Assembly: GCF_036588685.1 (NCBI RefSeq)
Contig: NW_026963290.1
Span: forward strand, 6,076,001 to 6,140,000
Source: Mytilus trossulus
Taxonomy: Eukaryota
DNA: 64,000 bases
Direction of reading: 5' to 3'
Numbering within the stretch: position 1 is the stretch's first letter; each line of letters starts with the position of its first letter. The notes beneath the pieces are model-generated. The model was not told where the DNA came from and did not search any database. It was given only the letters and a program-made list of their open reading frames with translations. Positions 4,727 through 30,657 of this stretch are shown in pieces. A program made the translations under genes and the position numbers.

Positions 4727-6123
4727 TTATTATGCTGTTATCTGTGGGCAAGCACAAGGAATCTGTTTTACCATGTCTCCTTGATATAATTCAAGTCACT
4801 TCCTTGAAAATTAACTGAAACAATCATGACAGGGTAGAATATAACAAATTGTGACGGAGATGGCAAAGTAAAATCACAAAAATGCTGAACTCCAAGGAAA
4901 ATTCAAAATGGAAAGTCCCTAATCAAATACCAAAATCAAATGCATGAATACCAACTGGCATTTTACTGACTTGGTACATATATTATCATATGCTAAAAAG
5001 GATGGATTTAATCTACTTGATAACCTTAATGTAAACCTCAACTGATCTATATTCAAACGAAGTCAAAAACCCGTCTTTTTTTCTAATTCCGCTCTTTCGG
5101 ATTTTAGTTTCATTGTATGTATAAAAAGTAACACGAAAGACTGCTTTTTAAAACAGACTATGGAGAATTGTCTCATTGGCACTCACACCACATCTTCTAT
5201 ATCTATAAAAGCTTTCGTTATTTTTCTTAATAATATTTATGTTCGTGTTGTTTGTGGAGATGCACTTTATCAGTAAGGAATTGATATTTCAATGGGCATT
5301 ATTTGAACCCTTTTTGCATATAATTGTATTTACCTTTGTAAATCACTGGTTATAATTTCTTAATTTTATTGAGCCTCAACGAAACCCAAGTTTGTTCTAT
5401 ATTCTGATAGTTCGAAACAAAACCATCAGGTATTTGGACGTCGTGTTCCCTGTACAGAGTGTAAAGAGCAAAATTCTGTAAAACATTTGTCATGTAGAGT
5501 CTTTCTGAAACGAGATAAGAATTCTACACAATTATTTAATAAATGCCAAATGTAATTACTAGTAAGTAAAACAATATTGATAACACTCTTAAACATCAAT
5601 GCTGAATAGTTAAACATCTGCAATTTAGGGTTAAGTCGCTTTTCAGTATTAATCCTTTGATACTGAACCGTAATAAATATATAATATTAGTGAAAGAAAG
5701 TAAGCGCTGACATTTCTTAAACAGATCAATACAGGAATCATACTTCTAGTGCGAGTAGTATAATTGTATTCACTGAAATTCCTCTCCTTCACTATTAATT
5801 GATGTCCACTTATATTTAAACGGACCATAAAACTTCAAATAAATAGACAAATTTACATATCATAAACATGATTTACGACTTTAAATGTTTACAAATTAAC
5901 AGAATATTATGGTTTCTATTTTCAATTGTATTACTGTCATTTATGGTAAATTTACATATATTTCTTTGCACGTTTTTGCAAGTATTTTGATCCTACATTA
6001 TATTATATCTTTATTTATCTTTTGTTAATAACACTGTAGTGTGTGTAATTTAAATATCAAATATTTTGTATGTGTTGTAACAGGAAGTTTTATCACAACA
6101 TTGAAAAGAAAATACATCTACAT

Positions 6124-6172
6124 ATGGATCTAGCTTACTCCTTTATGATTGTTTTTCATATTGCTGCTTTCA
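6124..6172 (+). CDS. Exon 1, signal peptide MDLAYSFMIVFHIAAF
   Basis: ATG plus hydrophobic stretch followed by a strong phase-1 donor GTAAGT, in frame with exon 2. Confidence 0.75.
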
Positions 6173-9100
6173 GTAAGTATAATAATATCGGAGTAATTAG
6201 TCATTTCCAGCAGCATGGGTTTGTTTGAGTTGTAAACACAACTTTTCTGTCCAATTAATTGTTAAGATGAAGTTCGATTTTCTTTTCAAAAGCTAAGGTC
6301 TATCCGCCTATTTGATTTTGTTTATTTGAAAATAACATGGTTATGCACTTTTGTACAGTAGATGTAGAATTGTATCAATGCAATTCAACCGAGGTACGTC
6401 TTAGGTACAAAAGTATTTTCAACCAAATGCAAGTTGTTAAATCACTGTAGGCATTTCCTCAAAACAAATTCTATGACCTCAATGTTTTGCACTTAAGATC
6501 AGATGAATTATTGAAATAAATATTATAATAAATTATATAACATTTTTATACATTATATACGATTATAAACAATTAGAGTTTGTAAGCGACACTTCATTGG
6601 TTTATCATGAGTGAAAACAACTTATTTGTACAAATCGCCTTGTTTCGATGTCGAAGGGACTAGACAAAAGTATTTGACTGATCCGAGGTTCGACTAATCC
6701 GAGATATAGTGTGTCGTCATGAATTGAGAATGCGTGAAATACAGTATGAGAGTTGAGTAAACTAGATACTTCAAAAAGTTTGTCTATTTTCATTTCTTAT
6801 TAAACACACACGTACAGATGAAAAGCAAAATCAATATCCTTCAGAAATATTTAAAAAGGTCAGTCACTATCAATTATGAAATTATCCGTGGAACGAAATA
6901 AATTCTGAATATCCTTATAAGGTCGTTTGCTTTTCAATAAATTATCATGAATAAACATAATTGCTCAAATCCTGCATACACACCTACAGCAAATTTAGTC
7001 AGGTTTATACTGTGCAAACACAATAAAAGGGAGGACAGTAGTTGAAATTTGGTTAGGATTTTACTTCTGCTTATTGAAAAACATGATCTCGAGTAAACAC
7101 GGTCGATATTTAAGAAAATTTTGACAAAACTCATGGTGCCAATTTTACGTGACGGCGAATTTAGTAAATAGTTCTGACGTCGTAAGAGCATTTAATTGAA
7201 AGTCTTTTAATACCGTCTTAAACATGAGAAACGTTTCGACTAGTATTGTGAAAATATTTGGCTGAATTTCAAGATTAAATGTTCGTTACAAAATAAGTCA
7301 TTGTTTGTGATGTCCTATACTTTTGTTAAGATGTTCCTTGTCTATCTAATGTTTTCATGTTGTAACGACTATTGTATCATGTATTTGTTCGTTTCTCTAT
7401 GCTTAGCTGTCTTTCGTTTGTTAGTGCTGTATTGCTGTCACGTAGTGTTGTCATCTTACTGAATTTTCTTAACATTACCTTACGAACGACAGGTTCGGCT
7501 AGCTATAGAACCAGAATCAATTCTACATTTTTTCTGAAAATGTCCTGTACTAATTCAGGAATATGACAGCTGTGATCACATACTCCGATTATCAAACAAT
7601 TCGTTTCTATGTATGTTGGTGGTTGTTTTCGTTGCACTTCAGTGTTTCTGTTGTTACGTTGTTTTCCTTTTAATGTTAGAGTATTTGACGTACATGTATC
7701 AACCTTCAACAAAAAAGCCACAACCAATAGTGTACAGATATACGACACGTAATGCGTAAAAACTTTGTGACCAAATGAGGCATACAGATAAATAGGGTTC
7801 ATAATCGACTATTTGAGAAAGATATGTTTTAAACTCACATTGTTTGTTCTGTAAGTTATCATTTTCTTATATAATTATTCATCTACCAAAGAATCATCAT
7901 GCTGATTTGTAAGGATGTTGAAGGGATGTATTGATATTTTTAAACCAAACTATAGTTCGTTATTTCCTTTTCACTGTTCATTCTAATCTAACAATTGATG
8001 TTTTAATTCATTTCATAGATACATTTGTATTAAAAGTTGATGCAACAGGTTCAGGTACTTCGGCAGATCCTTTTCAACAGTATGCTAAACGAGGACAGGA
8101 GGCAGTTCTACAGTGTACATATGAAAGGGAGTTCCTAAAATGGTACAAAAATGTGACAATTATATCTAATAGGAATTCTGTCATTGATTCTACAAAGTAC
8201 AAAGTATCAGCCACAAGCACTGGTTTGTACTACAGATTACATATACTGAACGTTCACCTCGGTGATAAGGGGATTTACATATGTCGAGGAGGGATAGGTG
8301 AATCATACTACATTCATCTGATTTTATATGGTACGCAGTTGTATACTTATAAATAATAGTATTATAAATCAACCAAATGACATATTTCTCGTACTATGAA
8401 CAACAATATTAAAAAAAATATTTCCGTACTCCTACGAACAAAGTTATTTTATTTATAGTTACCTGCGTACGCCATACTGTCCTAGTTTATATTTGTCCTT
8501 ATGACATTGCTTTTTATATTTTATATCATTTTGTGTCATAGATATAATTTATTTCGTGCTGTGTATGTGTTCTTGTTTTTTTAATATTTCTTATTGATTC
8601 AGTTAAGCATTTCATTTGATATTTCTTTATATATTTTTTTTCTATACTAAGATATACTAAGACATTTAGAATATGCAAATGTTTCAAGTAAGGTTGTCCC
8701 TTAGGTGTAGTTCGTGACCCTGAATTTGTTCAAGTTCAATCGATTTAGGACTATTGTACAGCGATATAATACTTTTGTCGTAATTTAAAGCAATGTGGAC
8801 GAAAATAAAGTCAGAAGAAAATACAAAAGTCAAATAAATTAATCTTGTTCTTTACTTTAGAGCAGCCTTTGCGTTTGACTATACAAAATGCCTCTACAGA
8901 TAACACATTGATTGGAACAGAAGGACATGACCTGCATATTGAATGTGTTGCAGTTCAAGGAATTCCTGTTCCTTTGTTATCCCTTGTAGTACTTGGTACA
9001 ACTGTTCAAACTGACTTCCAGGAATTGCGATACGTTTTGCGAAACATACCTAGAATTTATGATACAACAAATGTATCATGTATAGCAAACAGTTCTGCTT

Positions 9101-12100
9101 TGGATAATCCAATGACAACTACTGCTTTAATATATCTTAATCGTAGGTATCAATATATTTCTATAATAAGTTATGTTGATTTGTCCAATCAATTTTGAAC
9201 AGAATGATTGGTTAAAAAAATAATTTGTTCGCCACAGGAAGAGCTTCAGTAAGACCCTTTTGAACCCAAAATATATCAGTTTTACAAAATTTGTATAATG
9301 TAAACTTTTAGCCAATTTTTAGAATGTTGACTACTTCTGCTTCATAAATATGAAATGTTTTTGACAATATGATGCGCATATATCAGGTACTAGCATCATT
9401 AAGTCATGCTAAATTACTGAAATCTTCGCAATTTTAGTATGGCAGTAAAATTTTAGATTTTTGTCTTAAATGGAAGTGGCCACATTTTTGTTCATTCTTT
9501 GTATTACATGTAAGTTGTATTTGATGATAATACATAACATATATAAAGACTGAGGGTGAACATGGATGCGGCAACATTCATTGTTTTCCCACAAACTAAT
9601 CGAATCGACTGAAGTAGACAAATAAGTGTTTAAAAATGTACAAAATCGTTCTTCATAGGAACCTAATATGTGAGGCCAAAATCGGCCCTTACCAGATCTA
9701 CTCCTTTACATCTTAAGAACCGAGTTCTGGATGTAGATTACTTCTTATAGAGGTTTACGTATAAAAAAAATCAGTGAGAAATAACTATAGAGTATCTTAT
9801 TATGAAACGTGCTACTTCAAATACTTTCAAAGCGGTTTGTGTTTGTACCGGCCGACAAAGCAGCCAGCAATGTAGTTGTGGTATGACGTAAATACTACAC
9901 GGACGTTCTTAAGAATGAAATTATAAATTCATCTACTTTTAAGTCCATCCGCTTCACAGAGATTCATATCGTAAACAAGCATATCACAACCACATCAAAG
10001 CTTAAGGCTTCTTCGTAACATTTGACTACTATAAATTGGCTACCTAAACCAAAAATCATTTAAATATCGTTTCAAATCGGCCTCTAGTAAGTGTTCTACA
10101 ACTTATCTGCCAGTGCTCTTGACTAGTTCATTAACTACTATTAAAGAGCTTATCATAAATTATTGTAATAAAATATATGAACATAGTGGTATAAACCATT
10201 TTTGGAGTCTAAACAATTCTTTGGATGTTTTAGATAAATTGCGGGCTTTTGATGGTCCTTTTGATTCTGTTAATAGTTTTGATTTTTCTACTCTTTACAC
10301 TACACTTCCAAACTATCTTATTAAACAAAAGTTTCCTATTTAATATTTAAATGGTCGTTTGGTAAAGCTGAATGTAGATATATTTGCTGCAACTCATGTA
10401 AAGCCTTCTTCTCTAATAAGAAAGGTGAATATGCTAAATATACTTACTGGAGGTGTGATGAGATGATTGAGGCTGTTAATTTTCTCCTTGATAATATTTA
10501 CTTACGTTTCGGCAACAAAGTTTATCAACAGGTTGTAGGTATCCCCATGGGCACTAATTGTGCCCCTTTAATAGCAGACTTGTTTTTGTACTGTTACGAA
10601 TCACAGTTTATGACTAAACTCAGTTGATAAATTCAACAACACCTACCGTTATCTTGATGTTATTTTTTCGTTAAATAATCAAGAATTTTCTCAATATACT
10701 GCTGAAATTTACCCCAAGGAACTTACTTTAAATAAATCAAATGTATTCGGTAATAACTTCCTTTCCTGGATTTAGATATTTCGGTTTAAACGGGAAACTA
10801 CACACTAAAATTTACGACAAAAGAGATGATTTTTCGTTCCCTATCGTTAATTTTCCATTTTTAGATGGTGATGTTCCTTTGGCACCATCTTACGGTGTTT
10901 ATATTTCAAAACTTGTTCGCTATGCCCGTGTCTGTTGTGACGTTTTTGATTTTAACGAACGCAACCTATGTATATCTGGTAAATTATTAAACCAGGGATA
11001 TCGTTACCATAAATTACTTTAAACCTTTACTAAATTTTTCCTAGATATAAAGATTTGGTTTTGAAGTTTGGTTGTACCTGTAGAAAACTTATTTCAAACG
11101 GGATAGCACATCCTCATTTTTACGGAAATGTTGTTAACCGTGCCCTGAAATTTAGAAATGATCCATGTAAACTTGTTGCTCCTTTAAATAAACTTATTCT
11201 TAAAGGTGACCTATTCAACACTGTGATAAGATCATTGAATATTGTTTTTTTTGGTATAAATATTGACTTTGTTATAAGTAGATTAAAAGCTAACTAATTA
11301 TAACTAGTATGTTATATACATATACATTTTCATGGACTTACAATCTGTCGATACCTGTAACTTGGCATTGCACAAGGTCATGTTTTTCTCTGGCTGTTTA
11401 TAACGTCTTTACACTAAATCCATTGTATGTTGGATGTGTACGGATTGATTGCTTAGTCTTAGAGGCATGATTTTTTTATTAGTTGTTAATGGCTTTGAAC
11501 TAGCTGTCAGATAACTGCGAGTACTCTCAGATCTGTTCATTGTGTCTTTTTATGTCGGGATGTATAAGTACCCGGCCACGTCAACTTTTATGTTTTGTCT
11601 ATCTGATGAGTTAAGCCTTTTCAACTGATTTTTATAGTTCGTTCTTATGTTGTACTGTTAAACCACTGTCCCAGGTTAGGGGGAGGGTTGGGATCCCGCT
11701 AACATGTTTAATCCCGCCACATAATTTATGTATGTGCCTGTCCTAAGTCAGGAGCCTGTAATTCAGTGGTTGTCGTATGTTTATGTGTTACAATTTTGTT
11801 TTCGTTAATTTTTTTTACATAAATAAGGCCGTTAGTTTTCTCGTTTGAATTGTTTTACATTGTTTTATCGGGGCCTTTTATAGCTGACTATATGCGGTAT
11901 GGGCTTTGCTCATTGTTGAAGGCCGTACGGTGACCTATAATTGTTAATGTTTGTGTCATTTTAGTCTTTTGTGGATAGTTGTCTCATTGGCAATCATACC
12001 ACATCTTCTTTTTTTATACATATTCAGATAGAGGTTTTTTTTCTATCCTTACATAGAACACATGCATGCATAGACATATATGAGTATCGATTTTTGTTTA

Positions 12101-15100
12101 AAGTCAAAAATATTCTCATATGTTTTCAATTTCAGTAATGCCTTTGATGCCAGTGTTAAGTGTACCTCTCGTAAATACATTGGAGATGGTTCTATTTTCT
12201 ATATCATGCACATCAACCGGAAGCCGCCCTGCTGCCGCCATTTGGTGGATGATAGGCGAAACTGATGTAACAAATTTAGCATCGTCACAAGAAAAACAAG
12301 GGGTCGATGAGACTTTCACGGTTACATCCACGTTAGAATACACGGTGGACAGAAAATTTAACTTGCAACCGATAATATGTACAGCGAACAATACAATTGG
12401 TGGATTTACCAACCAAATAAACTTGTTCGTAAGATGTAAGTTTTCTCACAATACAGTTCGTTTATTTGATATTTTAAATGTAAAGATTTTATCATACTTT
12501 AAGACCATCCAAATTTGATTCATAATGATGAGTTATTGTAATACATGTTAAAAGCAAAATTGACGAATATAACGTTTTTGCTAAAATAAACAGCCATTAA
12601 ACGGTGACCTGTTGTAGTAAATTTCTGTGTGATTTGGTCTCTGTTGAAGAGTTGTATCGAAATTAAAATAATGTTCCGTTCGATGTCTATGACACAAGTG
12701 TGCTACAAATCTTTACAAGTATAAATGGGTTAAAGCAATTTATTCGAATTTAAAGTAGTTGAACCGAAAACTCTGCAATCGAAAATTGCGTCAAAATGTA
12801 TGTAAAGTGGTGTTATCGGTTCTTTGAACTTGAATTGAATATATTACAGTTCCGCCAGATGTTTCAGTTTATAATGTTACCTATAACATGACAGATCCAA
12901 CACGAACAATAAATTGTACAGCTCATGGTTATCCTGATACATATACATTTTATAAATGGAAGCATAGGTTGTATGGACACATTATTCGGGAACTTGACGG
13001 TGACACTATCTTAACACTGCCTGTGGTTCCTACACAACTTATATATCAAGACAATGGTGAATATGTGTGTATAGTTAGTAATGGTATTCAAGGTACGGAT
13101 GGAAAAGAGAAGCGGCAAGGAGCGGCACAAATTACTGTCTATGGTTATCTATGCTTTGTTGTTATACAATCAATATTACAAATTGAAAACTACTCTCTAA
13201 CGATTGCATGTTTACGTTTGTACTTTATTGAATAACAATGCATTTCATTATATTTAATTTGATGATCATCTAAAACGGAATAGTAATAATAATAACAATC
13301 AACGGTTACAGTTTTCTTGTCGTCCACAACTTCTTTATGTTAAGTAAAAGAAAGTCAAAAGATACAGTTCGAAAACTGACAAACTGACATCATACAAGAC
13401 AAACATCTTCACGGTCTACAACAACAACAAACAAAACTAACATATCACTTGCCTAATTCAACCATCGTTCAAGTTCTTATAGACAATAAGAAAAGTCAGG
13501 GATTGTAGATGAATCGAGGTTAACTTTTTTTAAACACGTTGTGTAATTTCACTTGAATCGCATTAATTGATTGACCTTACATTATACCTGTATGTTCAAA
13601 TTAAAAACTTTTTACCACTTCGATCGGATTAAACTTCAGATTGTCATTTGAGATAAACATGATAAATGCAAGGTAAATAAAGATTACCCATTTGATGTTC
13701 ATTTGTTTGTAGTTCCTAAAGTTCGATTGCGTTATGCTCAATTGTTTTTTTTCTGTGATCATTTTTCCTGGCCTAATAATATGCATGTATAGACCGAACT
13801 GTAAAAAGCTGACTTTCTATTTTGGCTTTTCTGATTTGCTATTTTTTCCCGATCTTAACAAAAAGCTGTTCATGAATATATATTCTTTGAAAATTAGAGG
13901 CAGTAGAAAATTATTGCTATTCAAATCTCATGAGTTTATTAATAAAATACAAAAAATCAATAAGCCTCGTCGCAGGATACTAAATCTTGGCGATTTCGGT
14001 CCTGATAGTATTTGAATTGCATGAAATAATTGCTTTTGCAATAGAAGATTTTTCTAACAATTAAGGATCAGTAACCTATTATAGTGTTTATCCGAAATTT
14101 GCTTTTTTTGATCCGAGGAAAAGAATGCACAAGCTGCAGTTTGTATTGCATCTATTCTTTGGCATTTATTTGCAGAAAGGTAAACACAAATAGAGGATTA
14201 GCAACAATTTAAATCTCTATCATATTTCAATACCTATAAGCATTTTTTATTCGAGCTTGCCGAATGAATATTTTTCACATACTTTTTTTCTAATTTAGCA
14301 CAACCAGTTTTTACTGCAGACAATGACGAAAGGAATATACAGTATGGAGAGATTGGAAAAACTATCGAAATTGTTGTGCATGTGTACAGTGTTCCTAGGT
14401 TCATATACAATGCTTGGTTCAATAATGGAAAACAGATTCAAGCATCTACTAAATATTTTTTTTCGGAATCAACCGTCAAGGTTGAAGATATTTTCCATGG
14501 AAAGACTGTTATGGTTAATGGCTATAAATCGGTTCTTACAATAAATAGTTTAACAAACGAAGACTTCACTAACTACACGTTAATATTAGAAAATGGTATC
14601 GGAAAATCTGTTGAACACACTGTGGTTTTAGAACGATCAAGTAAGACATTATTTATTTACACATTTACAATGAGTATATACGAAAAGGAATTAATGCAGT
14701 TCATAGAATAATAAATGAGGGGGATAGGAGGGGTCCTGATCCCGAAATCCCAGACTTTAAAAAACGAAATCCCGAGGTCCCGACTTTAAATAAAGTAAAT
14801 TCCGAAGTCCCGAAATCCGTAAAAAAGGATTCCCGGATCACAAAAGGGTCAATCCCGAAATCCCGATAAAGGTCATATCAAAAATAAATATAAGCGTTAT
14901 AAATATTCAAAATGAATACAGAGAACAACTGGTATATATAAAAATAAATTGGGAAAAAAAGGAAACACAACAAATGAAAATACTTCTAGTATAAATATAG
15001 CTGTACTATTGAAAAAAGCCATTTATATATATATATATAAAAGTACGTCTGAGTCAGTGACAACCCTACAACAGATGTATCCATCGGATCGCCATCAATG

Positions 15101-18100: not shown

Positions 18101-21100
18101 AATATTTCTAAAAATGATTGAAACACAATTTGCTCTGCTTATTTAGAATTTATTTACTAGATCACCATAAAAAAATCAATGTATATGATTTAGCATTTAT
18201 TCAAAATAAAAAAGCATTATATTTCTTGTGCTAAAAATGATTAAATTAAATGTAATAACTATACTTTGAATTTGCACGTTCTTCTCTGTGTCGGCTGTTA
18301 CTTTAATATCTGAGATAACGAGTACAGATTGACATACTGAACACATTAATGTAGTCTTTCCAGTTCGAGACACTTCATTTCCTTAATAAGTTGCCTCTGA
18401 TTGATGATTGAATGCTTTAATTTGATTGTTCAAATGCTTTTTACTAAATATTGCATATTATCTGGTTCGTACCACTGAGTTCTTTTATTCAAGCAACCAC
18501 GCATGTTGTATAAATTTTGCAGTTTTTTAAATTTGTTTTGTTTTTTACAGCTCAACATGTAAACAGGGATCTAAGGTATAATACTATTGTATAAAATATT
18601 ATATTGCTCATTCTAATGCAATTTGTTTGTAACGATAATTTTCATTGGACGTTGATAAATATTTTGAGGGGTTGAATTCCGCGTTCTACCAGTCCGTAAC
18701 TAAGAAAGCCACCATTTTGAATTCCGATTTTTTGTGGGATATGTAATTTCTCAAAAAATAAACAAGATTGTCACTTTTTGAGCCTCAAAATCTTCTTTTT
18801 GTCTATATTGAAACTATTCTGAAGCGTACGAAAAGAAAAAAATACGTTTAGTTTTCACGTTTGAAATGCAGAGTATACTTATGACGTCATATTGTTTAGA
18901 TGCTAAAGACGATGCAACAGTTTCGCCGACTTTTTCATTTCTGGCATTGTTAAGCCAAAATATTTATTAAATGAAATTTATTTTAATATGTGGCATTAGA
19001 ATGGAAATAACAATATTGTATTTTAAGCTTAGCCTTCGTAAAACTTGATTTTACTGTCGCAAACATCCGTTTACCTATCTCCGCTCTGCGTCGCTAGGTA
19101 AACTCAATTTGCGACAGTAAAATCGACGTTTTTCGAAAGCCAAGCTTAAAATACAATACAGTTATCTCCTAATTCGTATGATGATTTTTGTCTATTTGAA
19201 ATGCTTGAAAAACGGCTTCCATGTTGAAATCTGTGAATAAAGTAAGATTTTGTGTGATTCTTTGTTTTGTTCACAAATTGGTATCCATATAATGGAATTT
19301 TGTACGACTGTCATACAAGTGTTTGGTTAAGTTCTCTATAAAACAAGGTGTAATCCACAGTTTTCGACAGTAGAAAAGCGCTGTACCAAGCCAGGAGTAT
19401 GACAATTGTTGTCAATTCATTTGAGCTTTTATGTTTGTCATTTGATTAATTAGGGACTTTCAAAATTGAATTTTCATCGGAGTTCAGTTTTTAATGATTT
19501 TACTTGATACCGCTGTTCAAAGGTCAAAAATTGATTCAGAGAAAACAAATCAAGATTATAAACTAAAAATCGAGGAAAACAAATCAACTATACAAAGAGG
19601 ACAACAGCGAAACAATAGAACACACTGGTTGTAACAAAAAACAGTTTTCTGTCTATATCCCTTTCAGGTAGGCTCCAGACAAATTCATCCTCATTTGATG
19701 GAAAAATACTAAGATATCAAACGGTTCAATATTATACAGTTATGTGAATATAAAAATTTGAGCAAGGTCAAATAAAAAAAATATCGAACCAAAGTCAACA
19801 GATAATTTCAAACACTTAGAGAAATAAAATATGGATAAGAACATCTTTCTCCTTATTCTTAATTTAATTTAAGAATTGAAACCTTCAATAGACTTTGACA
19901 CATTCCCCATTTCCATACTCAATTTCTATTAAATACATGTGTTACATTTCTATTCAGTTTTCTCGTATTGATGATATTCAGTCAATATAGAAGCATATGT
20001 TGTTCTACAGAAAGGCAAACATGTTGATATTTATTTTATTTATTTTACAGTCATTCAAGAAATTACGAAAAACTTGGATTAAAAGATGCCCCTAATGTTT
20101 ATGAAGATTTAACTAATAAAGGTGATTTCACGTGTATCACTATGAAATTTGTTAATACAAAATATATCATTTACAAGAAAGAAAATAATACATACAATAA
20201 AGAGGTTACTTTGATAGGTTGATGCATATATTACCGTTAAATGTCATGTGGGAATTATATTACAAATTCAGAACAAGAACATGAGTATGTGATAGTTAAG
20301 ATTGACCAGGCTTTGAACTAATCCGATACACTGAGCCGGAAGTATAACGTTCAATGACACCCTAACCAAGCGAAAATGTGAAGCGCCTTCTACTGATTGC
20401 TTTTCAAAGAATGATAATTATTTTTAAAGACTAAAGAAGTTAGAACCCGATACAATCCAAATTCCAGGCATGCACGCTCCTACAAAAGACTGTGGCAGTT
20501 AGGTAACTAATAGAGGAAACATTACTGAAATCCTATTGCAGGCCAATTCCCATTAAATTTCTTATTCTTTCTAGCACTTTTCCAACAATCAATTTGCGCG
20601 CGAGCACTAACATTGGTGTATTTCCATCATTCAATAGAATATTAAAGGTAGAACAAGACGTATTGTAAACATTGGCATATTTAGTTTTAGTTAAACCTGC
20701 ATTTGATATTATTTCTTTCATTTTACAGAATCAAAGGAAATAGAAGGTCAAAGGTATTTTCTATATCGATAGATTTTTTAAAATAATAAGTTTTGAAACT
20801 TTTGATATTTGTGTAAATAAAGATGAACATGTTTTATCCTATGCTCTCTGAGTTAAAATTATTTCTTGTGTTTATAAATATCATTGTAATAAACTAAGTA
20901 CCAGAATATGACGATAAACAGCTGGAAAGACATTATAAATATATTATGTATACTACACTTTATATCACAAATTATCTATGTTATATTCTATTTCAAAATA
21001 AACGTGTTGCTGTTGCAGCACAACAAGACATTATGATGCACTTGGAAAGAAAGAGGTACCTAATGTTTATGACGAGTTGAACAATGAAGGTAATGTGACT

Positions 21101-24100
21101 ATATATGCTTCAATTTATAACAAAATAAATAAACAAGTAATAATCGTGACTAACGTTATGTAAAACAAAACAAAAAGCAAAAAAAAGGGCATTAGTCGGA
21201 CTAGACAGAACAAGTTATTGTATTTCTTAAACCAGTCAGAAGGTCAATTTATCAATTAAAAAGATTCATGGTTAAATTTCATAAATGATGATGTTTAACA
21301 ACAAACTATAACTGTGTAGTAATATTTTGCACTGAAATATTAATTTTGTATATATTTACAGCACAATATGAAAACAGATCTCAAAGGTATTTAGATTTGA
21401 TATGGAATTAATGTTTTGTTTATTTAAAAAAAAAATAACTTAGCAATACATATTTCATACTTATATAAAAAAATCGCAGACACTAGTGCTGAATCTTCAA
21501 AATATTGTTTTGAATTTGATGGATTGATATTTAAACAGACAGTCAGTTTTCAGATGGGTATTTATTCCCCCCTAGTAGCCGTTTTATTTGTTGTAAATTA
21601 GTAAGAATAATTCAAACAAATTATTCTCTAATATGAAAAGAACAAAATATCTTGCAAATTATTTAATTGAAATTAGGAATTTGACCAAAACAAGAAGCTC
21701 AGTTTCATATCTTGATATTTTCCGCGATGATGAGACATATGAAAGACTTAAAACTAAAATATATAACAAACCTGATGAGTTCAGTGACATTGTAACTATG
21801 GTCTTCATATGTGTGCAATGATACGATACCATCGTGCAATTTCACACTTTACATTTTAATACAGTTAATAATAAAAAACTACTAACATCGGCAATAATAA
21901 GTTTTACGGTTCCGTCGAGAATTACATATAGGAGTTAAAGCTTATCATGTCGACGAACTCACTGTCTTTTTAGAGTTCATGCTATTCTTTAGTTTTGTTT
22001 AACATGTTTAAGACCCTGAATCCTATCTTTATTTATCTATGAAATTTCCTCATTGGTTAATTACTTTTGTCTTTATGTCCAGCTCTAGAAACCATTATGA
22101 AGATCTTGGTCAAAAGAACGCAGCTTATGTTTATGACGATTTAAAAAGTGAAGGTAAGACGATTTTCGGATTAATTGAAACCATAAAGTCATGATAAATG
22201 TAAATTGAAACTGCTCATGCAGCAAATAAAAACAGAACGATTTATATTGTTTTGGAGTTATACTTTGGCAATGGAAGCGGGAAAAAAACCACACTATATA
22301 CAGGATTGATAATGACTTGACTCGTCTTGTACATATACCATAAAATTGTTATTACACATTATATGTGAATTTTAGTAAGCGCTTTAAACAGGACAATTTT
22401 GGTCTTATATTAGTTTTTTCACCAATTAACTTTGGTAGTTGTAATCTTACTTTTATTCATTACAGCTTGTGAAGAAACCAAAGCTAATAGGTAATATTTT
22501 TTTAATTAATTCTTTTGAAAGAATATCTTTTATTTTTGCAAAAAAATATTCAGTATGAACAAAAGTTAATGTAGTTTTCAAAGGTTAACAATTCGAACCA
22601 GAAATATCTGTTCTCGATTATCTAAAATATATCCATTCTTTATCGAAAGAAAAGAGGGATGAAACATACCTGAGAGACAGTTAACTCATAGATAGAAAAA
22701 TAAACTGATAATACCAAGGCTAAAAACAAAAAGACAAACACACAAATAATAGTACACAAGACACAACATAGAAATCTTATCTAAGCAACACGAACCCCAC
22801 CAAAACTGATCTCAGGTGCACCAGATGGTATGCAGATCCTGCTCCATATGTAACACCCTCCTGTTATTACAAACCCATTATATAGTCTAATTCAGTAGGT
22901 CACATTCGTCGTGATAAGGGAAGTGGATTGTAGATACGACAAACGCAACGTATCCGATATCATATGTGAAACGGTTAATCTATAACGGTCAACCAACTCG
23001 CGAAGAAATCTACCATTTAAGTGATCAAATTAGTATATATATATAGTGTGGTTGCATAATTATATCTGATTTCAATGAAAACATATCTTAATCTTACATT
23101 TTAGCCCGACACAACATTATGAGGACCTTGGTGTGAAAAGCAACCAAACTGTATATGATCATTTAATAAATGAGGGTGAGTCAACTTTGAAAATGTTTTT
23201 TTTATTTCTAAAACCAATTAAAACAAAAAATGTAATTGATAGAAACCATTGTATAAATAAATAAAAAGATGTTTACATTTGAAATAATATATACAACTGT
23301 CATTTAAGTAAGTCTGCAGTTTAATATATAAAAAAAACTTTAGGAAAATCAAGAATTTACATCACTAATCAGTTTGGATTACAATTAAAGAAGATTTATT
23401 ATATTTAGCCACTAAAATAAATCATGATTTGCTTATCGTTTTTATTATTTGTTTATTATTTGAAACCGTTTCAATTCTTCCGCTGATTCGGCCACACCAA
23501 TTTAATTTCTTGTACTACGGATTTTGGAATCCAAAAATGGGGCGAGCGAGCGATTTTAAAATTTTAATAAACAAATATTCAATTTTAAAATTTTTGAGGC
23601 GAAGCTAGAAAAGTAAAGGCGAGCGATTATAACTGTTTTTGGTAAACATAAAATAGTAGATTTTGACAATATTAAAACTTGATTTATTACATGTACTTTG
23701 ACATTTCTTTAATCAATGAAGTATTTTTCCCTGTATATTAAGAAATAATTGAATAATTAAATCTTATCAATTCATACATGTATGTCAGAATGTGTGACTG
23801 ACAATGAGACAATTCTCCATCCAAGTAAATAAAGGCAAAAGTAGTATACCGCTGTTCAAAACTCATAAATCCATGGACAAAAAACAAAATCGGGGTAACA
23901 AACTAAAATCGAGGGAAACGCATTAAATATAAGAGGAGAACAACGACATAATACCGAAACGTAACACACACAGAAACGGACCAAGCATCAGTCAAAACAC
24001 CACGAGAATAACAAATATAACATGAAAACCAAATACATGAATTTGGGATGGACAAGTACCGTGCCACGTCTTATCTCAATATCTCAAAAATAAGAGAAAA

Positions 24101-26200
24101 CACAAACGACTCAACGTTAAAATTCAACACACACATAAACGAACAATAATATAACAATGGCCATCTTCCTGACTTGGTACAGGACACTTTTAAAGGGGAA
24201 TAAAAGTGTTGGGTTGAACCTGGTTTTGTGGCATGCCAAACCTCGGAAATCAGGTTCCATACTTTTAAAAGGCCACTTTATGAATCTTATGTTAAAATTC
24301 ATGTATGTTCCGTCTACCTGAGGCTATTCATATTCATGTTTCTGATTTATAAGTTGCACTTTTAGCACAAATGTGGACTTGGAAAATTAAAATCGGTTGA
24401 AACTTGGTTTTCTGGAGGGGTGGGCTTCACATATGTGTCTTACACAGGAAGCTCAGAGGCATAAAACTTACTTTTAAAATAGTGTAAACCCAAGCCCATA
24501 TCACTACTGATCGTTATTATTAGTGACATATGCATAGGAAACGACTACTTCCGATTTCAGGTTCTTTTAAAGTAAAAAATTCGCCAAATCGTGAAATTCC
24601 GTATTTTTGGTCCAAATGACCTTTTGTATTCTGCTGAACCAAGATCAGATTCACTCCCACCTAACAACTATTGGTGTCAATTTGTTAACTAGGGCCCACT
24701 CTACATGCCGGCTACAGCTGGATACCTTTACCAGCACCCGTAAGTCTTCTGGGTCAAGATAAAGGACGAAAAGTCGTCAAAATTGATGCTTTTTGCACCT
24801 GTTGAACAACTTTGGGGCATATTTTTGCAAATAACCGAAAATTATACATTTTCTGAAAACAATTCAGCATGGTAGGGGTTAAATGGTGAAAACATGTCGA
24901 AGAATTTTGTAATATTTTTGGACTTTAACCATGTTAACACATTTACTTTAACAGTTTAATATTATTTATTAAGTAATTGGACCCCTCTTTTAGAATACTT
25001 GTTTAAAATATTATGTATTTCTCCTCTTTTTGAGTAAAAAATTCTAAGTTTTCAAAGGTTTTTGCTACTATACAAATCTTTTGAATTTCCATTTTCTTTT
25101 CTACAATAGTAAAATGACCCCTTGTCAGAGGAAGGGTTGTTCCCAACCTTATACTAACAAACACAGGTCAAAGTACGGCCTTTTATACAGGGCTTTGATC
25201 CAGACAAAATAGCAAACTCTAAGGGACCATATAATTATTAGTATTCACAATTTGAACAGGAAAACCAACGATCTAATTTCTACTAAACGGGAAAATACCA
25301 ATGAACAACATCATGCACATCAACAAACGATAACTGCCGAATAACATACCCTGAATCAATCAGGACAGGTGCATACACATGCGGCGGCTACGGATATGTT
25401 TGTTTCGCCAGCATACAAAATAATTGCAGTTGAAGGCAAATCATTTAGAAGTTCTTTGTACTTTATTCTAACAACGACAACAACGAACATTTTTCAACAG
25501 GGAATATAAGTAAGAGGGAAAGAAATCAATTTTTTGTTCTGTAGGCTACAGGTATTTCCGCTGTTATATATTTATTTCGGAGCACGCCCACTTGGGATAA
25601 ATTGGTTTCATGCTGAAACAAAAATTCTCACAGATATTTACATGGTGTGTTTGGGTGCTTATAGGTTTAAAATCGTTATATACAGGTTAGACTGTGATTT
25701 TAAAAACAAATGTTGATATCTTTGTATAATATTTACAAAAAAAACGGTTCGGGAAATTTACATGATTACATTTCCGGATGCGGGGTTATAAAAAAAAAAA
25801 AACGGTTTTGAAAAAATAGGTGCGGGCGGGTCCGTCGAACAAGGTATCAAATTGGTGTGGCCTAAAGATGCAACTACCTCAGAAAAGTTTCAACTGATCG
25901 AGTTCCAAACCTTTGGAAAGAACGATATATACATTTTCAAACTGTATAGCGGATTTCCTGAATTTTCACCAACCTGCAAAATAATTATATATTTTATAAT
26001 TTTGTTAAATCGGTTAATTTACATAAACAAAGGTCGACAAGACTCTATGTAATGTGACGGCGAATACATCTTTCTAATACAATTTACTCAAAATTTGGCA
26101 AAGAAAGTTTAAGATTGTTAAATGTCATGTTATATATATTTCAGACGCTGTAAATAAAGTGTATGAAAACGCTTCAAAACAATGGACACAGGAAAACTGA
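6124..26200 (+). CDS. 18-exon immunoglobulin-superfamily type I membrane receptor (signal peptide, 5 Ig-like domains, TM, cytoplasmic tail with 4 ITAM-like motifs), ~746 aa
   Basis: Manual join 6124-6172, 8019-8330, 8861-9142, 12136-12435, 12850-13143, 14299-14640, 15731-15850, 17031-17049, 17505-17587, 18551-18575, 20051-20121, 20729-20753, 21019-21089, 21362-21386, 22083-22153, 22466-22490, 23105-23175, 26145-26200. Total 2241 nt, all introns GT-AG, phases compatible, no internal stop. Confidence 0.88.
8019..8330 (+). CDS. Exon 2, Ig domain 1 (V/I-set like)
   Basis: AVLQC...LKWYK...LHILNV...DKGIYIC motif; tttcatag acceptor; phase 1-1. Confidence 0.92.
8861..9142 (+). CDS. Exon 3, Ig domain 2 (C2-like)
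   Basis: EGHDLHIECVAVQGIPVP...NVSCIANS; phase 1-1, AG/GT bounded. Confidence 0.9.
9830..12015 (+). mobile_element. 5'-truncated, decayed Penelope-like retroelement (RT domain plus 3' non-coding region) in intron 3
   Basis: Frameshifted RT motifs: PADKAASN, SFDFSTLYTTLP, QVVGIPMGTNCAPLIADLFL, YRYLDV, TKIYDKRDDFSFPIVNFPFL, SYGVYISKLVRYARVC. The ORF ends at 11297 with no C-terminal GIY-YIG, which fits the Naiad/Chlamys arrangement (endonuclease N-terminal); that assignment is inferred. Confidence 0.85.
12136..12435 (+). CDS. Exon 4, Ig domain 3 (nephrin/sidestep-like C-type)
   Basis: ISCTSTGSRPAAAIWW...TVTSTLEY...IICTANN; GTAAGT donor; phase 1-1. Confidence 0.92.
12850..13143 (+). CDS. Exon 5, Ig domain 4
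   Basis: FPPDV...INCTAHGYP...KWKH...QDNGEYVCIVSNGI; phase 1-1. Confidence 0.92.
14299..14640 (+). CDS. Exon 6, membrane-proximal Ig-like domain 5 lacking cysteines
   Basis: QPVF...VYSVP...AWFNNG...SVLTINSLTNEDFTNYTLILENGIG; GTAAGA donor; phase 1-1. Confidence 0.9.
15131..15307 (+). mobile_element. tRNA-like (A box/B box) core enclosed by 34-bp inverted repeats, part of an insert within a (TA)n tract (~15025-15325)
   Basis: TGGTCTAGCGG and GGTTCGAATCC lie between arms 15131-15164 and 15274-15307 (33/34 complementary). Confidence 0.65.
15731..15850 (+). CDS. Exon 7, transmembrane helix and stop-transfer
   Basis: PLKPEPSSLGMIIGAVCGSLISGLVLLAVFVIVILKKRK; phase 1-1; GTTAGT donor. Confidence 0.92.
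17031..17587 (+). CDS. Exons 8 (17031-17049) and 9 (17505-17587): juxtamembrane module with a single tyrosine motif GYEEV
   Basis: GHQQCE-N-TVTFEKTDSDDHANGYEEVQNSRETQN; phases 1-2 then 2-1; donors GTAAGT and GTATGA. Confidence 0.75.
18551..20121 (+). CDS. ITAM module A1: exon 10 (18551-18575) and exon 11 (20051-20121)
   Basis: AQHVNRDL-S-HSRNYEKLGLKDAPNVYEDLTNK; 25 + 71 nt. Confidence 0.85.
18996..19173. mobile_element. Fold-back (hairpin) MITE
   Basis: Long imperfect palindrome, e.g. TATTGTATTTTAAGCTT...GATTTTACTGTCGCAAA / TTTGCGACAGTAAAATC...AAGCTTAAAATACAATA. Confidence 0.7.
20729..21089 (+). CDS. ITAM module A2: exon 12 (20729-20753) and exon 13 (21019-21089)
   Basis: ESKEIEGQ-S-TTRHYDALGKKEVPNVYDELNNE; 25 + 71 nt. 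Confidence 0.88.
21362..22153 (+). CDS. ITAM module A3: exon 14 (21362-21386) and exon 15 (22083-22153)
   Basis: AQYENRSQ-S-SRNHYEDLGQKNAAYVYDDLKSE; 25 + 71 nt. Confidence 0.88.
21500..21850 (+). mobile_element. Ancient Penelope-like RT relic in intron 14 (paralogous relic at ~33480-33810)
   Basis: Degenerate FEFDGLIFKQTVSFQMG and SVSYLDI...LKTKIYNKPDEFS, resembling the RT at 10500-10860. Confidence 0.6.
22466..23175 (+). CDS. ITAM module A4: exon 16 (22466-22490) and exon 17 (23105-23175)
   Basis: ACEETKAN-S-PTQHYEDLGVKSNQTVYDHLINE; 25 + 71 nt. Confidence 0.88.
22650..23005 (-). mobile_element. 3'-end fragment of a second Penelope-like family (related copies at ~29385-29735 and ~34259-34572 on -, and 46031-46408 on +)
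   Basis: Shared GATCTCAGGTG...GCAGATCCTGCTCCA block; reverse complement of the 46031-46408 copy. Confidence 0.65.
23490..25862. mobile_element. TIR element (Harbinger-like ends) with nested repeats, in intron 17 of tail A only
   Basis: GGCCACACCAATTT at 23490 and AAATTGGTGTGGCC|TAA ending at 25862; absent from the paralogous intron of tail B. Confidence 0.65.
26145..26200 (+). CDS. Exon 18, terminal coding exon of tail A: DAVNKVYENASKQWTQEN*
   Basis: tttcag acceptor, phase 1, TGA at 26198-26200; paralog at 36128. Confidence 0.8.
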
Positions 26201-26664
26201 TTTACTGAATATCATGTTCAAATGAAAATAGAATACTGACAATTTTCTAATGAAGTATTTTGTCAATTGACAACCAGTTAATATATTCGTATCATATGAC
26301 ATGAAATTCGTCATTGATGTCAGATGAAATGAGCAAAAAACCTACATTGCGAAATCCTTTACAAAAAACTACTATGGAAAGGACACGAAAACTTCTGGAC
26401 TACAACTGATAGTTTTCCACACTACGCATCAGTATTTACGTTTACGAAAGAATCATTTTTAGTAGATTGCTCCGAATGTGTCTGAATAATCAATACACAC
26501 ATCAAGTTTCATTTAGTAAGGCTGAAAGAAAGAAATATAACTTCATGTTTCATATGAATCGAAAAGTGAAAAAGTACAATTATATATATATATAATTTCA
26601 ATTTAACTGTAACTAAAATAGTAACAAGCTTACTTTGTTCACATGCCAGATGTATATTGCTTGA

Positions 26665-26670
26665 AATAAA
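26665..26670 (+). terminator. Candidate poly(A) signal of tail A
   Basis: AATAAA near the end of the 3' UTR homology block; the paralogous position in tail B is ATTAAA (36650-36655). Confidence 0.5.
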
Positions 26671-26831
26671 AGTTGGAAAGTTACTTATCTTGGAAAAAGA
26701 AATATAAAAAACAAAAAGAGACTTAGCAGTAAAGGTTAAACTTTACAAAGACAACACAAGGAAACTTTTATTCAGATGAAAAACGTCAGTACCTAGGACC
26801 ATCATGCATCAAATGTGAAATAGATACGAAC

Positions 26832-30200: not shown

Positions 30201-30657
30201 GGGAAAACACCAACTATAAAAAGAGGACAACAACGAAACAACAGAAAACACTGATTGATACAAAAACAAACGTCGAGCTTTAATGTTTCTATCTGTACCT
30301 TTCTGGTCCGGACAAATTCATCTTCATTTGATATAGAAATCTAAGATATATCACGGTTAAATTTAAAAATAGTTATGTGGCTATAAGAATTTGAGCAAGG
30401 CGAAATAATAAACAAATATCGAACCAAAGTCAACAGATGAGTGCAAACACTTAGAGAAAAAAAACTAAGATAAGAAGAACATCTTTCTCCCTAATTTGAA
30501 TTTAAGAATTATACATAAAACCCACATTGAACTTCAATACATGTGTTACATTTTTTATTCATTTATTTTCATATTTATGATATTCAGTCAATACAGAAGC
30601 ATATATTTGTACTACAGAAATGGAAACGTGTTGATATTTATTTTATTTATGTTACAG

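What the first reader, a model, noticed from the sequence alone, without database searches (positions are those of the whole stretch)
6124..26200. Invertebrate five-Ig receptor carrying four tandem ITAMs in its own tail
Seen: after SP-5xIg-TM, the spliced tail reads YEKL-x8-YEDL, YDAL-x8-YDEL, YEDL-x8-YDDL and YEDL-x8-YDHL, repeating every 32 aa. These exons are too small for the ORF track. Established: YxxL/I-x6-8-YxxL/I is the ITAM that binds tandem-SH2 Syk/ZAP-70 (and Shark) kinases; CD3-zeta has three, and vertebrate ITAMs usually sit on adaptor chains rather than on the ligand-binding chain. I recall an oyster five-Ig receptor with an ITAM being reported, but orthology is unchecked. Inference: an activating, probably haemocyte, receptor with built-in signal amplification.
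Basis: partly seen in the sequence, partly recalled or inferred. Interest (0 to 1): 0.85.

Follow-up and report, generated by a model that had tools for sequence, protein, structure and literature searches.

The report
Mussel five-Ig receptor with four ITAMs
This is a real, transcribed mussel (Mytilus trossulus) gene for a cell-surface receptor with five immunoglobulin domains whose own tail carries four copies of the tyrosine motif that vertebrate immune receptors use to switch cells on, one member of a mussel gene family with three to five such motifs that nobody seems to have described.

Summary
From the first Ig exon (Ig1) to the stop it matches a RefSeq computational model, XP_063416831.1 (Mytilus trossulus, named "NCAM 1-B-like"). 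Spliced contigs from four public runs show all six junctions that link the 71-nt ITAM exons and the 25-nt microexons.

The tail has four YxxL-x8-YxxL motifs spaced exactly 32 aa apart. It has no ITIM or ITSM. It also has a membrane-proximal YEEV and two YEN motifs.

Relatives in five Mytilus species carry three to five modules. The window gene has lost the first: exon 18008-18069 is degenerate.

The same genome encodes a Shark-type Syk-family kinase (SH2-ankyrin-SH2-kinase), a Src-family kinase, SHP-2, Csk and PLC-gamma.

A second, intact tail-only copy with four more ITAM exons lies at 30.1-36.7 kb. Whether it is used is untested.

The activating, Syk/Shark-recruiting mechanism is inferred. 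Haemocyte expression, phosphorylation and SH2 binding were not tested. Orthology to the oyster one-ITAM receptor CgIgR could not be shown.

Verdict: a new variant of a known kind; the gene itself is already in RefSeq under a generic name. The scan had already flagged the tail modules and the second cassette on this same DNA.

The parts
6124..6172 (+). Exon 1: start codon and hydrophobic signal-peptide exon (ends in phase 1)
   Evidence: Donor is GTAAGT. The peptide aligns with the N-termini of M. galloprovincialis relatives P0136 and P0135. The RefSeq model XP_063416831.1 lacks this exon and starts 'MD'.
8019..8330 (+). Ig1 exon (V/I-set-like; the domain that varies most between paralogs)
   Evidence: Pfam Ig_3, I-set and V-set at E 1e-5 to 1e-4, below the curated cut-offs. 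Beta-sandwich in the AF2 model. 9-79% identity to paralogs, against 65-90% for Ig2-Ig5 in most of them.
8861..9142 (+). Ig2 exon
   Evidence: No Pfam hit, but it has a Cys pair (149/194) and folds as a beta-sandwich at pLDDT about 90.
12136..12435 (+). Ig3 exon (CD80-like C2-set)
   Evidence: Pfam C2-set_2 at E 1.3e-10, 41.6 bits, above the cut-off of 21.
12850..13143 (+). Ig4 exon
   Evidence: Pfam Ig_3 at E 1.6e-4. Cys pair 337/388. Weak donor GTTATC, but it is the one used in the RefSeq model.
14299..14640 (+). Ig5 exon (no Cys pair)
   Evidence: Pfam Ig_3 and I-set at E 5e-5 to 1e-4. This was the query that retrieved the family. Beta-sandwich in the AF2 model.
15731..15850 (+). Transmembrane exon followed by KKRK
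   Evidence: The top Kyte-Doolittle windows are at residues 538-562. Helix 523-548 in the RefSeq-numbered AF2 model.
17031..17049 (+). 19-nt microexon (GHQQCE)
   Evidence: GT-AG. Present in the RefSeq model and conserved in relatives' models. Not covered by the laid reads.
17505..17587 (+). 83-nt exon with a single YEEV motif (Src-family SH2 type)
   Evidence: Contigs cover it, and X2 joints leave it towards 18550 and 20056.
18008..18069 (+). Degenerate first ITAM module (HFEAL-x8-YDSL; first Tyr is Phe, exon shortened); skipped in the model
   Evidence: Homologous to the intact first ITAM (HYEALGLQDVPNAYDNL) of relatives. One X2 contig joins position 18069 to the ITAM1 exon through 37 letters that are not in the window there; it probably comes from a relative or paralog.
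18551..18575 (+). 25-nt microexon before ITAM1
   Evidence: Strong splice sites. In the RefSeq model. An X2 joint ends at 18550 (table 5c).
20051..20121 (+). ITAM1 exon (YEKL-x8-YEDL), 71 nt
   Evidence: Joint 20121|20729 in X2.
20729..20753 (+). 25-nt microexon
   Evidence: Joints 20121|20729 and 20753|21019 in X2. X5 and X6 contigs carry a diverged 25-nt piece at this place.
21019..21089 (+). ITAM2 exon (YDAL-x8-YDEL), 71 nt
   Evidence: Joint 21089|21362 in X2, X5 and X6.
21362..21386 (+). 25-nt microexon (carries a YEN motif)
   Evidence: Joint 21386|22083 in X1, X2, X5 and X6.
22083..22153 (+). ITAM3 exon (YEDL-x8-YDDL), 71 nt
   Evidence: Joint 22153|22466 in X1, X2 and X6.
22466..22490 (+). 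25-nt microexon
   Evidence: Joint 22490|23105 in X1, X2 and X6.
23105..23175 (+). ITAM4 exon (YEDL-x8-YDHL), 71 nt
   Evidence: X6 record 29 (280 nt) spans ITAM2-25-ITAM3-25-ITAM4.
26145..26200 (+). Last coding exon (…NKVYENASKQWTQEN, stop ends at 26200)
   Evidence: Same end in the RefSeq model. The VYEN end is conserved across the family. The junction was not covered by the laid reads.
30101..36700 (+). Second tail cassette. ITAM exons 30658-30728, 31635-31705, 34162-34232 and 35133-35203; microexons 31316-31340, 32683-32707 and 34848-34872; last exon 36128-36168. No ectodomain exons.
   Evidence: Segmental duplicate of 19476-23442 plus 26011-26716. Exons are 86.5% identical with no indels; introns are 71% identical with 27 gap openings per kb. 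Frame, splice sites and all 8 ITAM tyrosines are kept. There are no Ig exons elsewhere in the window. Its use in RNA was not tested.

Best explanation
The locus encodes a type I membrane receptor of the immunoglobulin superfamily: signal peptide, five Ig domains, one transmembrane helix and a 184-residue acidic, disordered tail. The tail is built from frame-neutral 96-nt modules, each a 71-nt exon plus a 25-nt microexon, and each module holds one complete ITAM (YxxL-x8-YxxL). Four modules are intact here.

Most likely mechanism (inferred): ligand-driven clustering through the variable outer domain Ig1 lets a Src-family kinase phosphorylate the ITAM tyrosines. The membrane-proximal YEEV is a likely docking site for that kinase's own SH2 domain. 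Each doubly phosphorylated ITAM then binds the two SH2 domains of the mussel's Shark-type Syk-family kinase, so one chain could recruit up to four kinase molecules. The two YEN motifs could add a Grb2-type adaptor.

Shown: the gene structure, its transcription and splicing, motif conservation across five Mytilus species, and the presence of the kinase toolkit in the same genome. Inferred: phosphorylation, SH2 binding, an activating output, the cell type and the ligand.
For: - Gene model: 18 GT-AG exons give 746 aa. The protein equals RefSeq XP_063416831.1 from Ig1 to the stop.
- Splicing: GT..AG joints for all six junctions between 71-nt and 25-nt exons appear in contigs of four runs from four studies. 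Single contigs span ITAM1-25-ITAM2-25-ITAM3 and ITAM2-25-ITAM3-25-ITAM4.
- Topology: one TM segment followed by KKRK, 9 N-glycosylation sequons outside, four Ig Cys pairs. The AF2 model has five beta-sandwiches, a TM helix and a tail at pLDDT about 26.
- Motifs: 4 ITAM, 0 ITIM, 0 ITSM, one YEEV, two YEN; 0 of 200,000 shuffles reach 3 ITAMs.
- Conservation: 3-5 modules in 11 five-Ig relatives from M. edulis, M. galloprovincialis, M. coruscus and M. californianus. Further positions are conserved: G at +4, K at +6, P at +9, V at +11.
- Toolkit in the same genome: a Shark-type kinase on contig C3 with two SH2 domains that keep the FLVR arginine, ankyrin repeats between them, and a kinase exon whose best PDB matches are SYK and ZAP-70. 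Also a Src-family kinase, SHP-2, Csk and PLC-gamma.
- Precedents: oyster CgIgR (five Ig, TM, one ITAM with the same x8 spacing and LG after the first YxxL) binds CgSyk and drives ERK (PMC6994640). Drosophila Draper's own ITAM is phosphorylated by Src42A and binds the Shark tandem SH2 (PMC6219719).
Against: - There are no data on tissue or cell type, phosphorylation or binding.
- The laid contigs come mostly from other Mytilus species or paralogs (several differences per exon), so they show the family's splicing rather than this allele's.
- Residues upstream of the first tyrosine are basic or polar, not the acidic D/E-x-x of the classical extended consensus.
- The ectodomain resembles cell-adhesion IgSF proteins only weakly (DIPs, IgLONs, CADM4, nectin-1; E 1e-7 to 1e-4), which fits adhesion as well as immunity.
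- The RefSeq model has no signal peptide. The exon-1 junction rests on homology and splice signals only.
- Junctions 15850|17031, 17049|17505 and 23175|26145 were not covered by reads.
Confidence: 0.6

Rival explanations
1. It is a cell-adhesion or cell-recognition IgSF protein of the nectin, IgLON or Kirre/nephrin type, used in tissue organisation or the nervous system. On this reading the tyrosine motifs serve as general SH2 or endocytic (YxxPhi, AP-2) signals rather than as Syk/Shark-recruiting ITAMs.
For: RefSeq names in the family are NCAM1-like, irregular chiasm C-roughest-like, nephrin-like and syg-2-like. The best solved-structure matches are adhesion molecules. Larger Mytilus relatives add an FN3 domain, as CAMs do. 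No expression data tie the gene to haemocytes.
Against: The paired YxxL units with fixed x8 spacing are conserved as pairs in 53 distinct modules, each pair inside one exon; a simple sorting signal would not require that. The matches to CAMs are weak (E 1e-7 at best). NCAM's FN3 domains are absent. The only characterised bivalve protein with this layout signals through Syk.
Confidence: 0.2
2. It is a self/non-self (allorecognition-type) receptor. On this reading a tandem, diversifying IgSF family detects conspecific or foreign cells, such as gametes, neighbours or transmissible neoplasia cells, through a variable distal domain and signals through ITAMs, as proposed for the Hydractinia Alr family.
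For: Paralogs lie in tandem on contig C15. Ig1 is far more variable than Ig2-Ig5 and comes in at least two unrelated types. Invertebrate histocompatibility IgSF genes with ITAM-bearing tails are described (10.1101/2022.03.04.482883, listed; I did not read beyond its abstract).
Against: There are no polymorphism data, no evidence of homophilic binding, and only a small family was seen here. Ig1 variability fits microbial-ligand diversification equally well.
Confidence: 0.1
3. The downstream cassette (30.1-36.7 kb) is a dead remnant of a partial duplication, and the four-ITAM count of this gene is simply a decaying version of an ancestral five. On this reading ITAM number carries no special meaning.
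For: No Ig exons accompany cassette 2. dN/dS between the cassettes is 0.62, which fits one neutral branch. RefSeq has no protein using cassette 2 among the hits. One module of the main gene has already decayed. Module number differs between paralogs.
Against: After about 22% substitution and 27 gap openings per kb in the flanking introns, cassette 2 keeps all exon lengths, all 15 splice sites, the open frame and all 16 Tyr/Leu motif residues. By my rough estimate this would happen under neutrality less than once in 100,000 times.
Confidence: 0.4

Closest known systems
CgIgR (also cited as CgIgIT2), Crassostrea gigas (PMC6994640; review PMC11999971)
   Same: A bivalve type I receptor with five extracellular Ig domains, a TM segment and an ITAM on its own tail. 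The motif has the same x8 spacing and a Gly straight after the first YxxL (YTELG…YEKL against YEKLG…YEDL). It was shown to bind bacteria, to dimerise, and to recruit CgSyk and activate ERK in haemocytes.
   Different: CgIgR has one ITAM; this gene has four and its Mytilus relatives up to five. Homology was not demonstrated: neither the single-sequence nor the profile search retrieved any oyster protein.
CD3-zeta (CD247) of the vertebrate T-cell receptor
   Same: Several ITAMs in tandem on one disordered cytoplasmic chain, read by a tandem-SH2 Syk-family kinase after Src-family phosphorylation.
   Different: CD3-zeta has three ITAMs, almost no ectodomain, and is a separate signalling subunit. 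Here four to five ITAMs sit on the ligand-binding chain. From my memory (not tested here), vertebrate ITAMs are split between two exons, whereas each mussel ITAM lies whole in one 71-nt exon, which suggests an independent build-up.
Drosophila Draper with Src42A and Shark (PMC6219719)
   Same: An invertebrate receptor with the ITAM on its own tail plus additional non-ITAM tyrosines.
   Different: Draper has an EGF-repeat ectodomain and a single ITAM with longer spacing; it is not IgSF.
NCAM1 and Kirre/IrreC-roughest (the names RefSeq gives this family)
   Same: Five Ig domains, a single TM segment, and weak sequence similarity of the Ig domains.
   Different: NCAM has two FN3 domains and no ITAM. 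Kirre-type tails end in PDZ-binding motifs (from my knowledge, not tested). Neither family has an ITAM array, so the names reflect generic Ig similarity only.

Membership tests
ITAM-bearing immunoreceptor | YxxL/I-x6-8-YxxL/I motif | tested here: met
   Four matches with x8 spacing at residues 614, 646, 678 and 710.
ITAM-bearing immunoreceptor | The motif lies in the cytoplasmic part of a membrane protein | tested here: met
   Single TM segment at 538-562 followed by KKRK; N-glycosylation sequons and Ig Cys pairs lie on the other side. TM helix and disordered tail in the AF2 model.
ITAM-bearing immunoreceptor | Acidic residue(s) upstream of the first tyrosine (extended consensus D/E-x-x-Y) | tested here: not met
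   The upstream residues are S/T-x-K/R-H/N. Acidic residues follow the tyrosines instead. This feature is optional in most definitions.
ITAM-bearing immunoreceptor | Both tyrosines are phosphorylated and bind the tandem SH2 of a Syk-family kinase | not testable with these tools
   Only the presence of the partner was shown: a Shark-type kinase with two SH2 domains in the same genome.
Immunoglobulin superfamily type I receptor | Ig-fold domains | tested here: met
   Pfam hits for four of five exons; Ig3 is above the curated cut-off and the others are at E 1e-5 to 1e-4. Five beta-sandwich domains in the AF2 model.
Immunoglobulin superfamily type I receptor | N-terminal signal peptide | tested here: inconclusive
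   Exon 6124-6172 is hydrophobic and aligns with relatives' N-termini. No signal-peptide predictor was on hand, no read covered the junction, and the RefSeq model omits the exon.
Ortholog of oyster CgIgR | Significant sequence similarity or reciprocal best match to the C. gigas protein | tested here: inconclusive
   No Crassostrea protein appeared among the hits, but these searches use a word pre-filter or list only the top hits. The CgIgR sequence itself was not available by reference. Only layout and motif spacing agree.
NCAM1 (the RefSeq name) | Five Ig domains followed by two fibronectin type III domains | tested here: not met
   There is no FN3 exon between Ig5 and the TM exon. FN3 occurs only in more distant Mytilus relatives.
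Shark/Syk-family kinase (the proposed partner, contig C3:81.98-82.02 Mb) | Two SH2 domains, ankyrin repeats between them (Shark type), and a C-terminal Syk-like tyrosine kinase domain | tested here: met
   N-SH2: Pfam SH2 at E 9e-11. Ankyrin: Pfam Ank_4, Ank and Ank_2 above their cut-offs. C-SH2 pieces with the FLVR arginine were found with a local SH2 profile. The kinase exon matches SYK and ZAP-70 best, at 105 bits against 86 or less for other kinases on a single stretch.

The most novel reading that the evidence does not exclude
The gene carries two alternative, complete four-ITAM signalling tails. On this reading the same five-Ig ectodomain can be spliced from donor 18575 either to cassette 1 (20051-26200) or, in the same phase, to cassette 2 (30658-36168), giving one receptor two interchangeable multi-ITAM outputs. 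More broadly, frame-neutral 96-nt ITAM modules and whole tail cassettes would be shuffled among tandem paralogs to tune signal strength, an invertebrate route to the ITAM multiplicity that vertebrates reach by assembling CD3 chains.
Probability: 0.25. Interest if true: 0.75.

Novelty: new variant of a known kind. Interest (0 to 1): 0.6.

Why it matters
- ITAM multiplicity: why the T-cell receptor complex needs ten ITAMs is a standing question in immune signalling. Here evolution has placed four to five ITAMs on a single ligand-binding chain, so a dimer would carry eight to ten, in an animal with no adaptive immunity.
- Natural experiment: paralogs carry three, four or five modules, which gives a ready-made test of what ITAM number does.
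- Exon design: one ITAM per frame-neutral 71+25-nt pair shows how such arrays can grow and shrink.
- Bivalve immunology: only one ITAM receptor (oyster CgIgR) has been characterised, and these genes are hidden in RefSeq under names such as "NCAM1-like". They are concrete candidates for haemocyte activating receptors in mussels, a group of interest for aquaculture disease and transmissible neoplasia.

Tried and rejected
- Joined model: I did not send the joined 746-aa model to any search tool. Searches used single exons by reference or the RefSeq protein P0001 that a tool returned; the join was built only inside scripts from window coordinates.
I rebuilt it from coordinates.
- The first sequencing-run run was one base too long and was resent.
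- Read laying allows one call of 6,000 letters.
- Apparent ITAM2 skipping (joint 20121 to 22083 through a different 25-nt piece): I reject this as alternative splicing of this gene. The inserted letters match paralogs that lack that module (P0131, P0003 and the upstream C15 paralog), so it is cross-mapping at 90% likeness.
- An eight-ITAM read-through isoform: rejected, because no credible phase-compatible microexon lies between 23175 and 30658.
- Oyster orthologs: none found with a single sequence or a nine-sequence profile.
- The hunt for Syk among SH2 hits first turned up Csk, SHP-2, RasGAP, PLC-gamma, Src, Abl and Fes before the Shark-type gene. I did not look for a second, ankyrin-free Syk.
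- ORFs at 10.1-11.3 kb looked like a mobile-element remnant, but Pfam found nothing.
- Complex prediction was not used: binding needs phosphotyrosine, which it cannot model.
- Literature searches for Mytilus plus ITAM found nothing relevant.


Full report
**What is there.** It also finds a second set of four at 30671, 31648, 34175 and 35146.

Each motif lies whole in a 71-nt exon with a pyrimidine-rich acceptor and a GTRAG-type donor. Between successive 71-nt exons there is one convincing 25-nt microexon with strong splice sites, conserved between the two sets. A 71-nt exon runs 1 base + 23 codons + 1 base, and a 25-nt exon runs 2 bases + 7 codons + 2 bases. Only the pair (96 nt, 32 aa) is frame-neutral.

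Working upstream, I found the signal-peptide exon, five phase-1 Ig exons, a TM exon, a 19-nt exon, an 83-nt exon and one more 25-nt exon.

**Independent support for the model.** Searching the Ig5 exon against 1.8 billion representative proteins returned a 731-aa protein that is 100% identical over that exon. It is RefSeq XP_063416831.1, "neural cell adhesion molecule 1-B-like", from Mytilus trossulus. From the start of Ig1 to the stop it equals my model, including the 19-nt exon, all 25-nt exons and all four ITAMs. It differs only at the N-terminus, where it starts "MD" and lacks the hydrophobic exon 6124-6172. No read was laid on that junction.

**RNA evidence.** One read-laying run was allowed, on 17400-23399, with Logan contigs of four runs from four studies. 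The contigs skip introns with GT..AG ends, so they are spliced RNA. Once the tool's stated cut shift is applied, joints are seen for 20121|20729, 20753|21019, 21089|21362, 21386|22083, 22153|22466 and 22490|23105.

- One 1,066-nt contig (X5) carries ITAM1-25-ITAM2-25-ITAM3.
- One 280-nt contig (X6) carries ITAM2-25-ITAM3-25-ITAM4.
- An X2 joint ends at 18550, next to the acceptor of microexon 18551.

Most contigs differ from the window at several positions per exon. They therefore come largely from other Mytilus species or paralogs, and they show that the family splices this way rather than proving it for this allele.

A joint from 20121 to 22083 through a different 25-nt piece looked like skipping of the ITAM2 module. 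The inserted letters match paralogs that lack that module, so I read it as cross-mapping.

**Protein features.** Pfam gives Ig-family hits for Ig1, Ig3, Ig4 and Ig5; Ig3 is CD80-like C2-set and above the curated cut-off, and Ig2 has no hit. An AlphaFold2 model built on a nine-sequence alignment shows five beta-sandwich domains, a TM helix and a tail at pLDDT about 26, which means disordered.

There is one strong hydrophobic segment (538-562) followed by KKRK. Nine N-glycosylation sequons and four Cys pairs lie on the N-terminal side. The 184-residue tail is acidic (net charge -13) and has 12 tyrosines:

- eight in the four ITAMs;
- one in a membrane-proximal YEEV;
- two in YEN motifs, one in a microexon and one at the C-terminus;
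- one further tyrosine in no motif.

There is no ITIM or ITSM. No shuffle out of 200,000 of the tail reaches three ITAMs. From established SH2 specificities (my knowledge, not tested here), pYEEI/V suits Src-family SH2 domains and pYxN suits Grb2.

**The family.** Searching with the tail alone, and then with the whole protein, found only Mytilus proteins at high scores. They come from M. edulis, M. galloprovincialis, M. coruscus and M. californianus, under names such as NCAM1-like, irregular chiasm C-roughest-like or simply Ig-like. They share the five-Ig layout and carry three to five ITAM modules.

The usual first module (HYEALGLQDVPNAYDNL) corresponds to window 18008-18069. There the first tyrosine is Phe and the exon is shortened, and both the RefSeq model and mine skip it. 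More distant Mytilus relatives with an added FN3 domain carry one to three modules, and a scallop protein carries one.

Across 53 distinct modules, positions beyond the Tyr and Leu are also conserved: Gly +4, Lys +6, Pro +9, Val +11, and acidic residues at +13 and +14. Tyr and Leu are fixed by how the modules were picked, so their invariance there is circular.

Between paralogs, Ig1 is far more variable (9-79% identity, with at least two unrelated types) than Ig2-Ig5 (mostly 65-90%). That marks Ig1 as the likely diversified, ligand-facing domain.

In the M. trossulus genome the window is contig C15:6,076,001-6,140,000. A tandem paralog with the same layout lies about 10-30 kb upstream of the gene.

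**The second cassette.** Window 19476-23442 plus 26011-26716 is duplicated at 30101-35482 plus 35807-36700. The copy holds four ITAM exons, three microexons and a last exon, but no Ig, TM or proximal exons, and no Ig exon lies anywhere else in the window.

- Its exons are 86.5% identical to cassette 1 and have no indels.
- The aligned introns are 71% identical and have 27 gap openings per kb.
- All splice sites, the frame and all eight ITAM tyrosines are kept.
- The stop comes five codons early.
- dN/dS is 0.62.

That dN/dS would fit one neutral branch. Keeping lengths, splice sites and motif residues at this divergence is very unlikely without selection; by my rough estimate it would happen less than once in 100,000 times. 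Gene conversion or recent loss of function are alternatives.

Donor 18575 and acceptor 30658 are phase-compatible, so an alternative tail is possible. No RNA evidence was obtainable, and no RefSeq protein using the cassette appeared. The scan's first stage had already flagged this cassette and the 25+71-nt module design on this same DNA.

**Is the proposed reader present?** SH2 and tyrosine-kinase profile searches of the window's own genome, followed by reading the candidate loci, identified Csk, SHP-2, RasGAP, PLC-gamma, a Src-family kinase, Abl and Fes. They also identified, on contig C3:81.98-82.02 Mb, a gene with this layout:

- an N-terminal SH2 domain;
- ankyrin repeats;
- a second SH2 domain;
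- a proline-rich stretch;
- a kinase domain with a YY activation loop.

Pfam confirms the SH2, Ank and kinase pieces. The kinase exon matches human SYK and ZAP-70 best among solved structures. A local SH2 profile found the missing SH2 pieces, and both domains keep the FLVR arginine. This is the Shark layout. So the kinases and effectors that ITAM signalling needs are encoded in this genome. That the tail uses them is inference.

**Comparison with what is known.** The closest described protein is oyster CgIgR: five Ig domains, a TM segment and one ITAM with the same x8 spacing and a Gly after the first YxxL. It binds bacteria, dimerises, and recruits CgSyk to activate ERK in haemocytes (PMC6994640). 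A 2025 review of invertebrate IgSF proteins cites that receptor as its only ITAM example and does not mention Mytilus.

Drosophila Draper shows that an invertebrate ITAM on the receptor's own tail is phosphorylated by a Src kinase and binds Shark's tandem SH2 (PMC6219719). CD3-zeta has three tandem ITAMs but is a separate signalling chain.

I found no paper describing multi-ITAM receptors in mussels. The RefSeq name NCAM1-B-like does not fit, because there are no FN3 domains. Matches to solved adhesion molecules are weak.

**Verdict.** Its functional core remains untested: haemocyte expression, phosphorylation, SH2 binding and amplification.

The gene is already annotated by machine, so it is not a new gene. 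The new point is recognising a Mytilus family of ligand-binding chains with three to five modular ITAMs, plus a spare tail cassette. I class it as a new variant of a known kind, with interest about 0.6.

**Limits.** The joined protein was never sent to a search tool.

Noticed in passing
G000:C15:6053000-6072100 (loci L001-L003), upstream of the window: A tandem paralog with the same layout: Ig exons, TM, the 83-nt YEEV exon, a first module reading YEAL-x8-YDNF (last Leu is Phe), ITAM1, ITAM3-like (YKDL…YDDL), ITAM4 and a VYEN end. It has no ITAM2 module.
   Followed up: partly
G000:C3:81982677-82021974 (loci L021-L024), + strand: A Shark-type Syk-family kinase gene (SH2, ankyrin repeats, SH2, a proline-rich repeat, kinase). 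About 12 tandem copies of a 44-nt unit encoding 'TTPPPLPSSQVSVYRQLL…' lie at 82010055-82010649 in the linker region.
   Followed up: partly
G000: C12:10462403-10469311 (-), C6:44941000-44946219 (-), C4:57229827-57235290 (+), C1:70759287-70766948 (+): Loci for SHP-2 (two SH2 domains), PLC-gamma (two SH2 domains), Csk (two neighbouring alternative-looking SH2 exons) and a Src-family kinase. I identified them by eye from their translations.
   Followed up: partly
window 1-8018, especially position 41: The RefSeq model XP_063416831.1 starts 'MD' and lacks the signal-peptide exon 6124-6172. The only ATGG|GTR in the upstream 8 kb is at position 41, so the annotated start may sit in a far upstream exon or be a mis-call.
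   Followed up: partly
window 19800-19999 and 22800-22999 (also 18600-19400): Intronic stretches with very high summed contig depth in all four runs (up to about 55,000) and sharp loose ends at 19893 and 19925. These are short, highly repeated, transcribed elements inside the introns.
   Followed up: no
window 10113-11297, + strand (intron between Ig2 and Ig3): A run of ORF fragments that look like a decayed mobile-element protein. Pfam finds nothing at E below 0.01.
   Followed up: partly
window 53611-54632 and 55643-57321: Satellite-like arrays: 20/30-nt units over about 1 kb, and a 355-nt unit repeated 4.7 times at 99% identity.
   Followed up: no
proteins P0139 (M. edulis 'nephrin-like', 977 aa) and P0138 (M. 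coruscus, 754 aa): P0139 has ITAM-like units (YEVLGRTDQPNAYEDL, twice) at its N-terminus ahead of the Ig domains, probably two neighbouring genes fused in the model. P0138 has the family ectodomain and TM but an unrelated Cys-rich tail. Both point to tail/ectodomain mix-ups or shuffling in this family.
   Followed up: no
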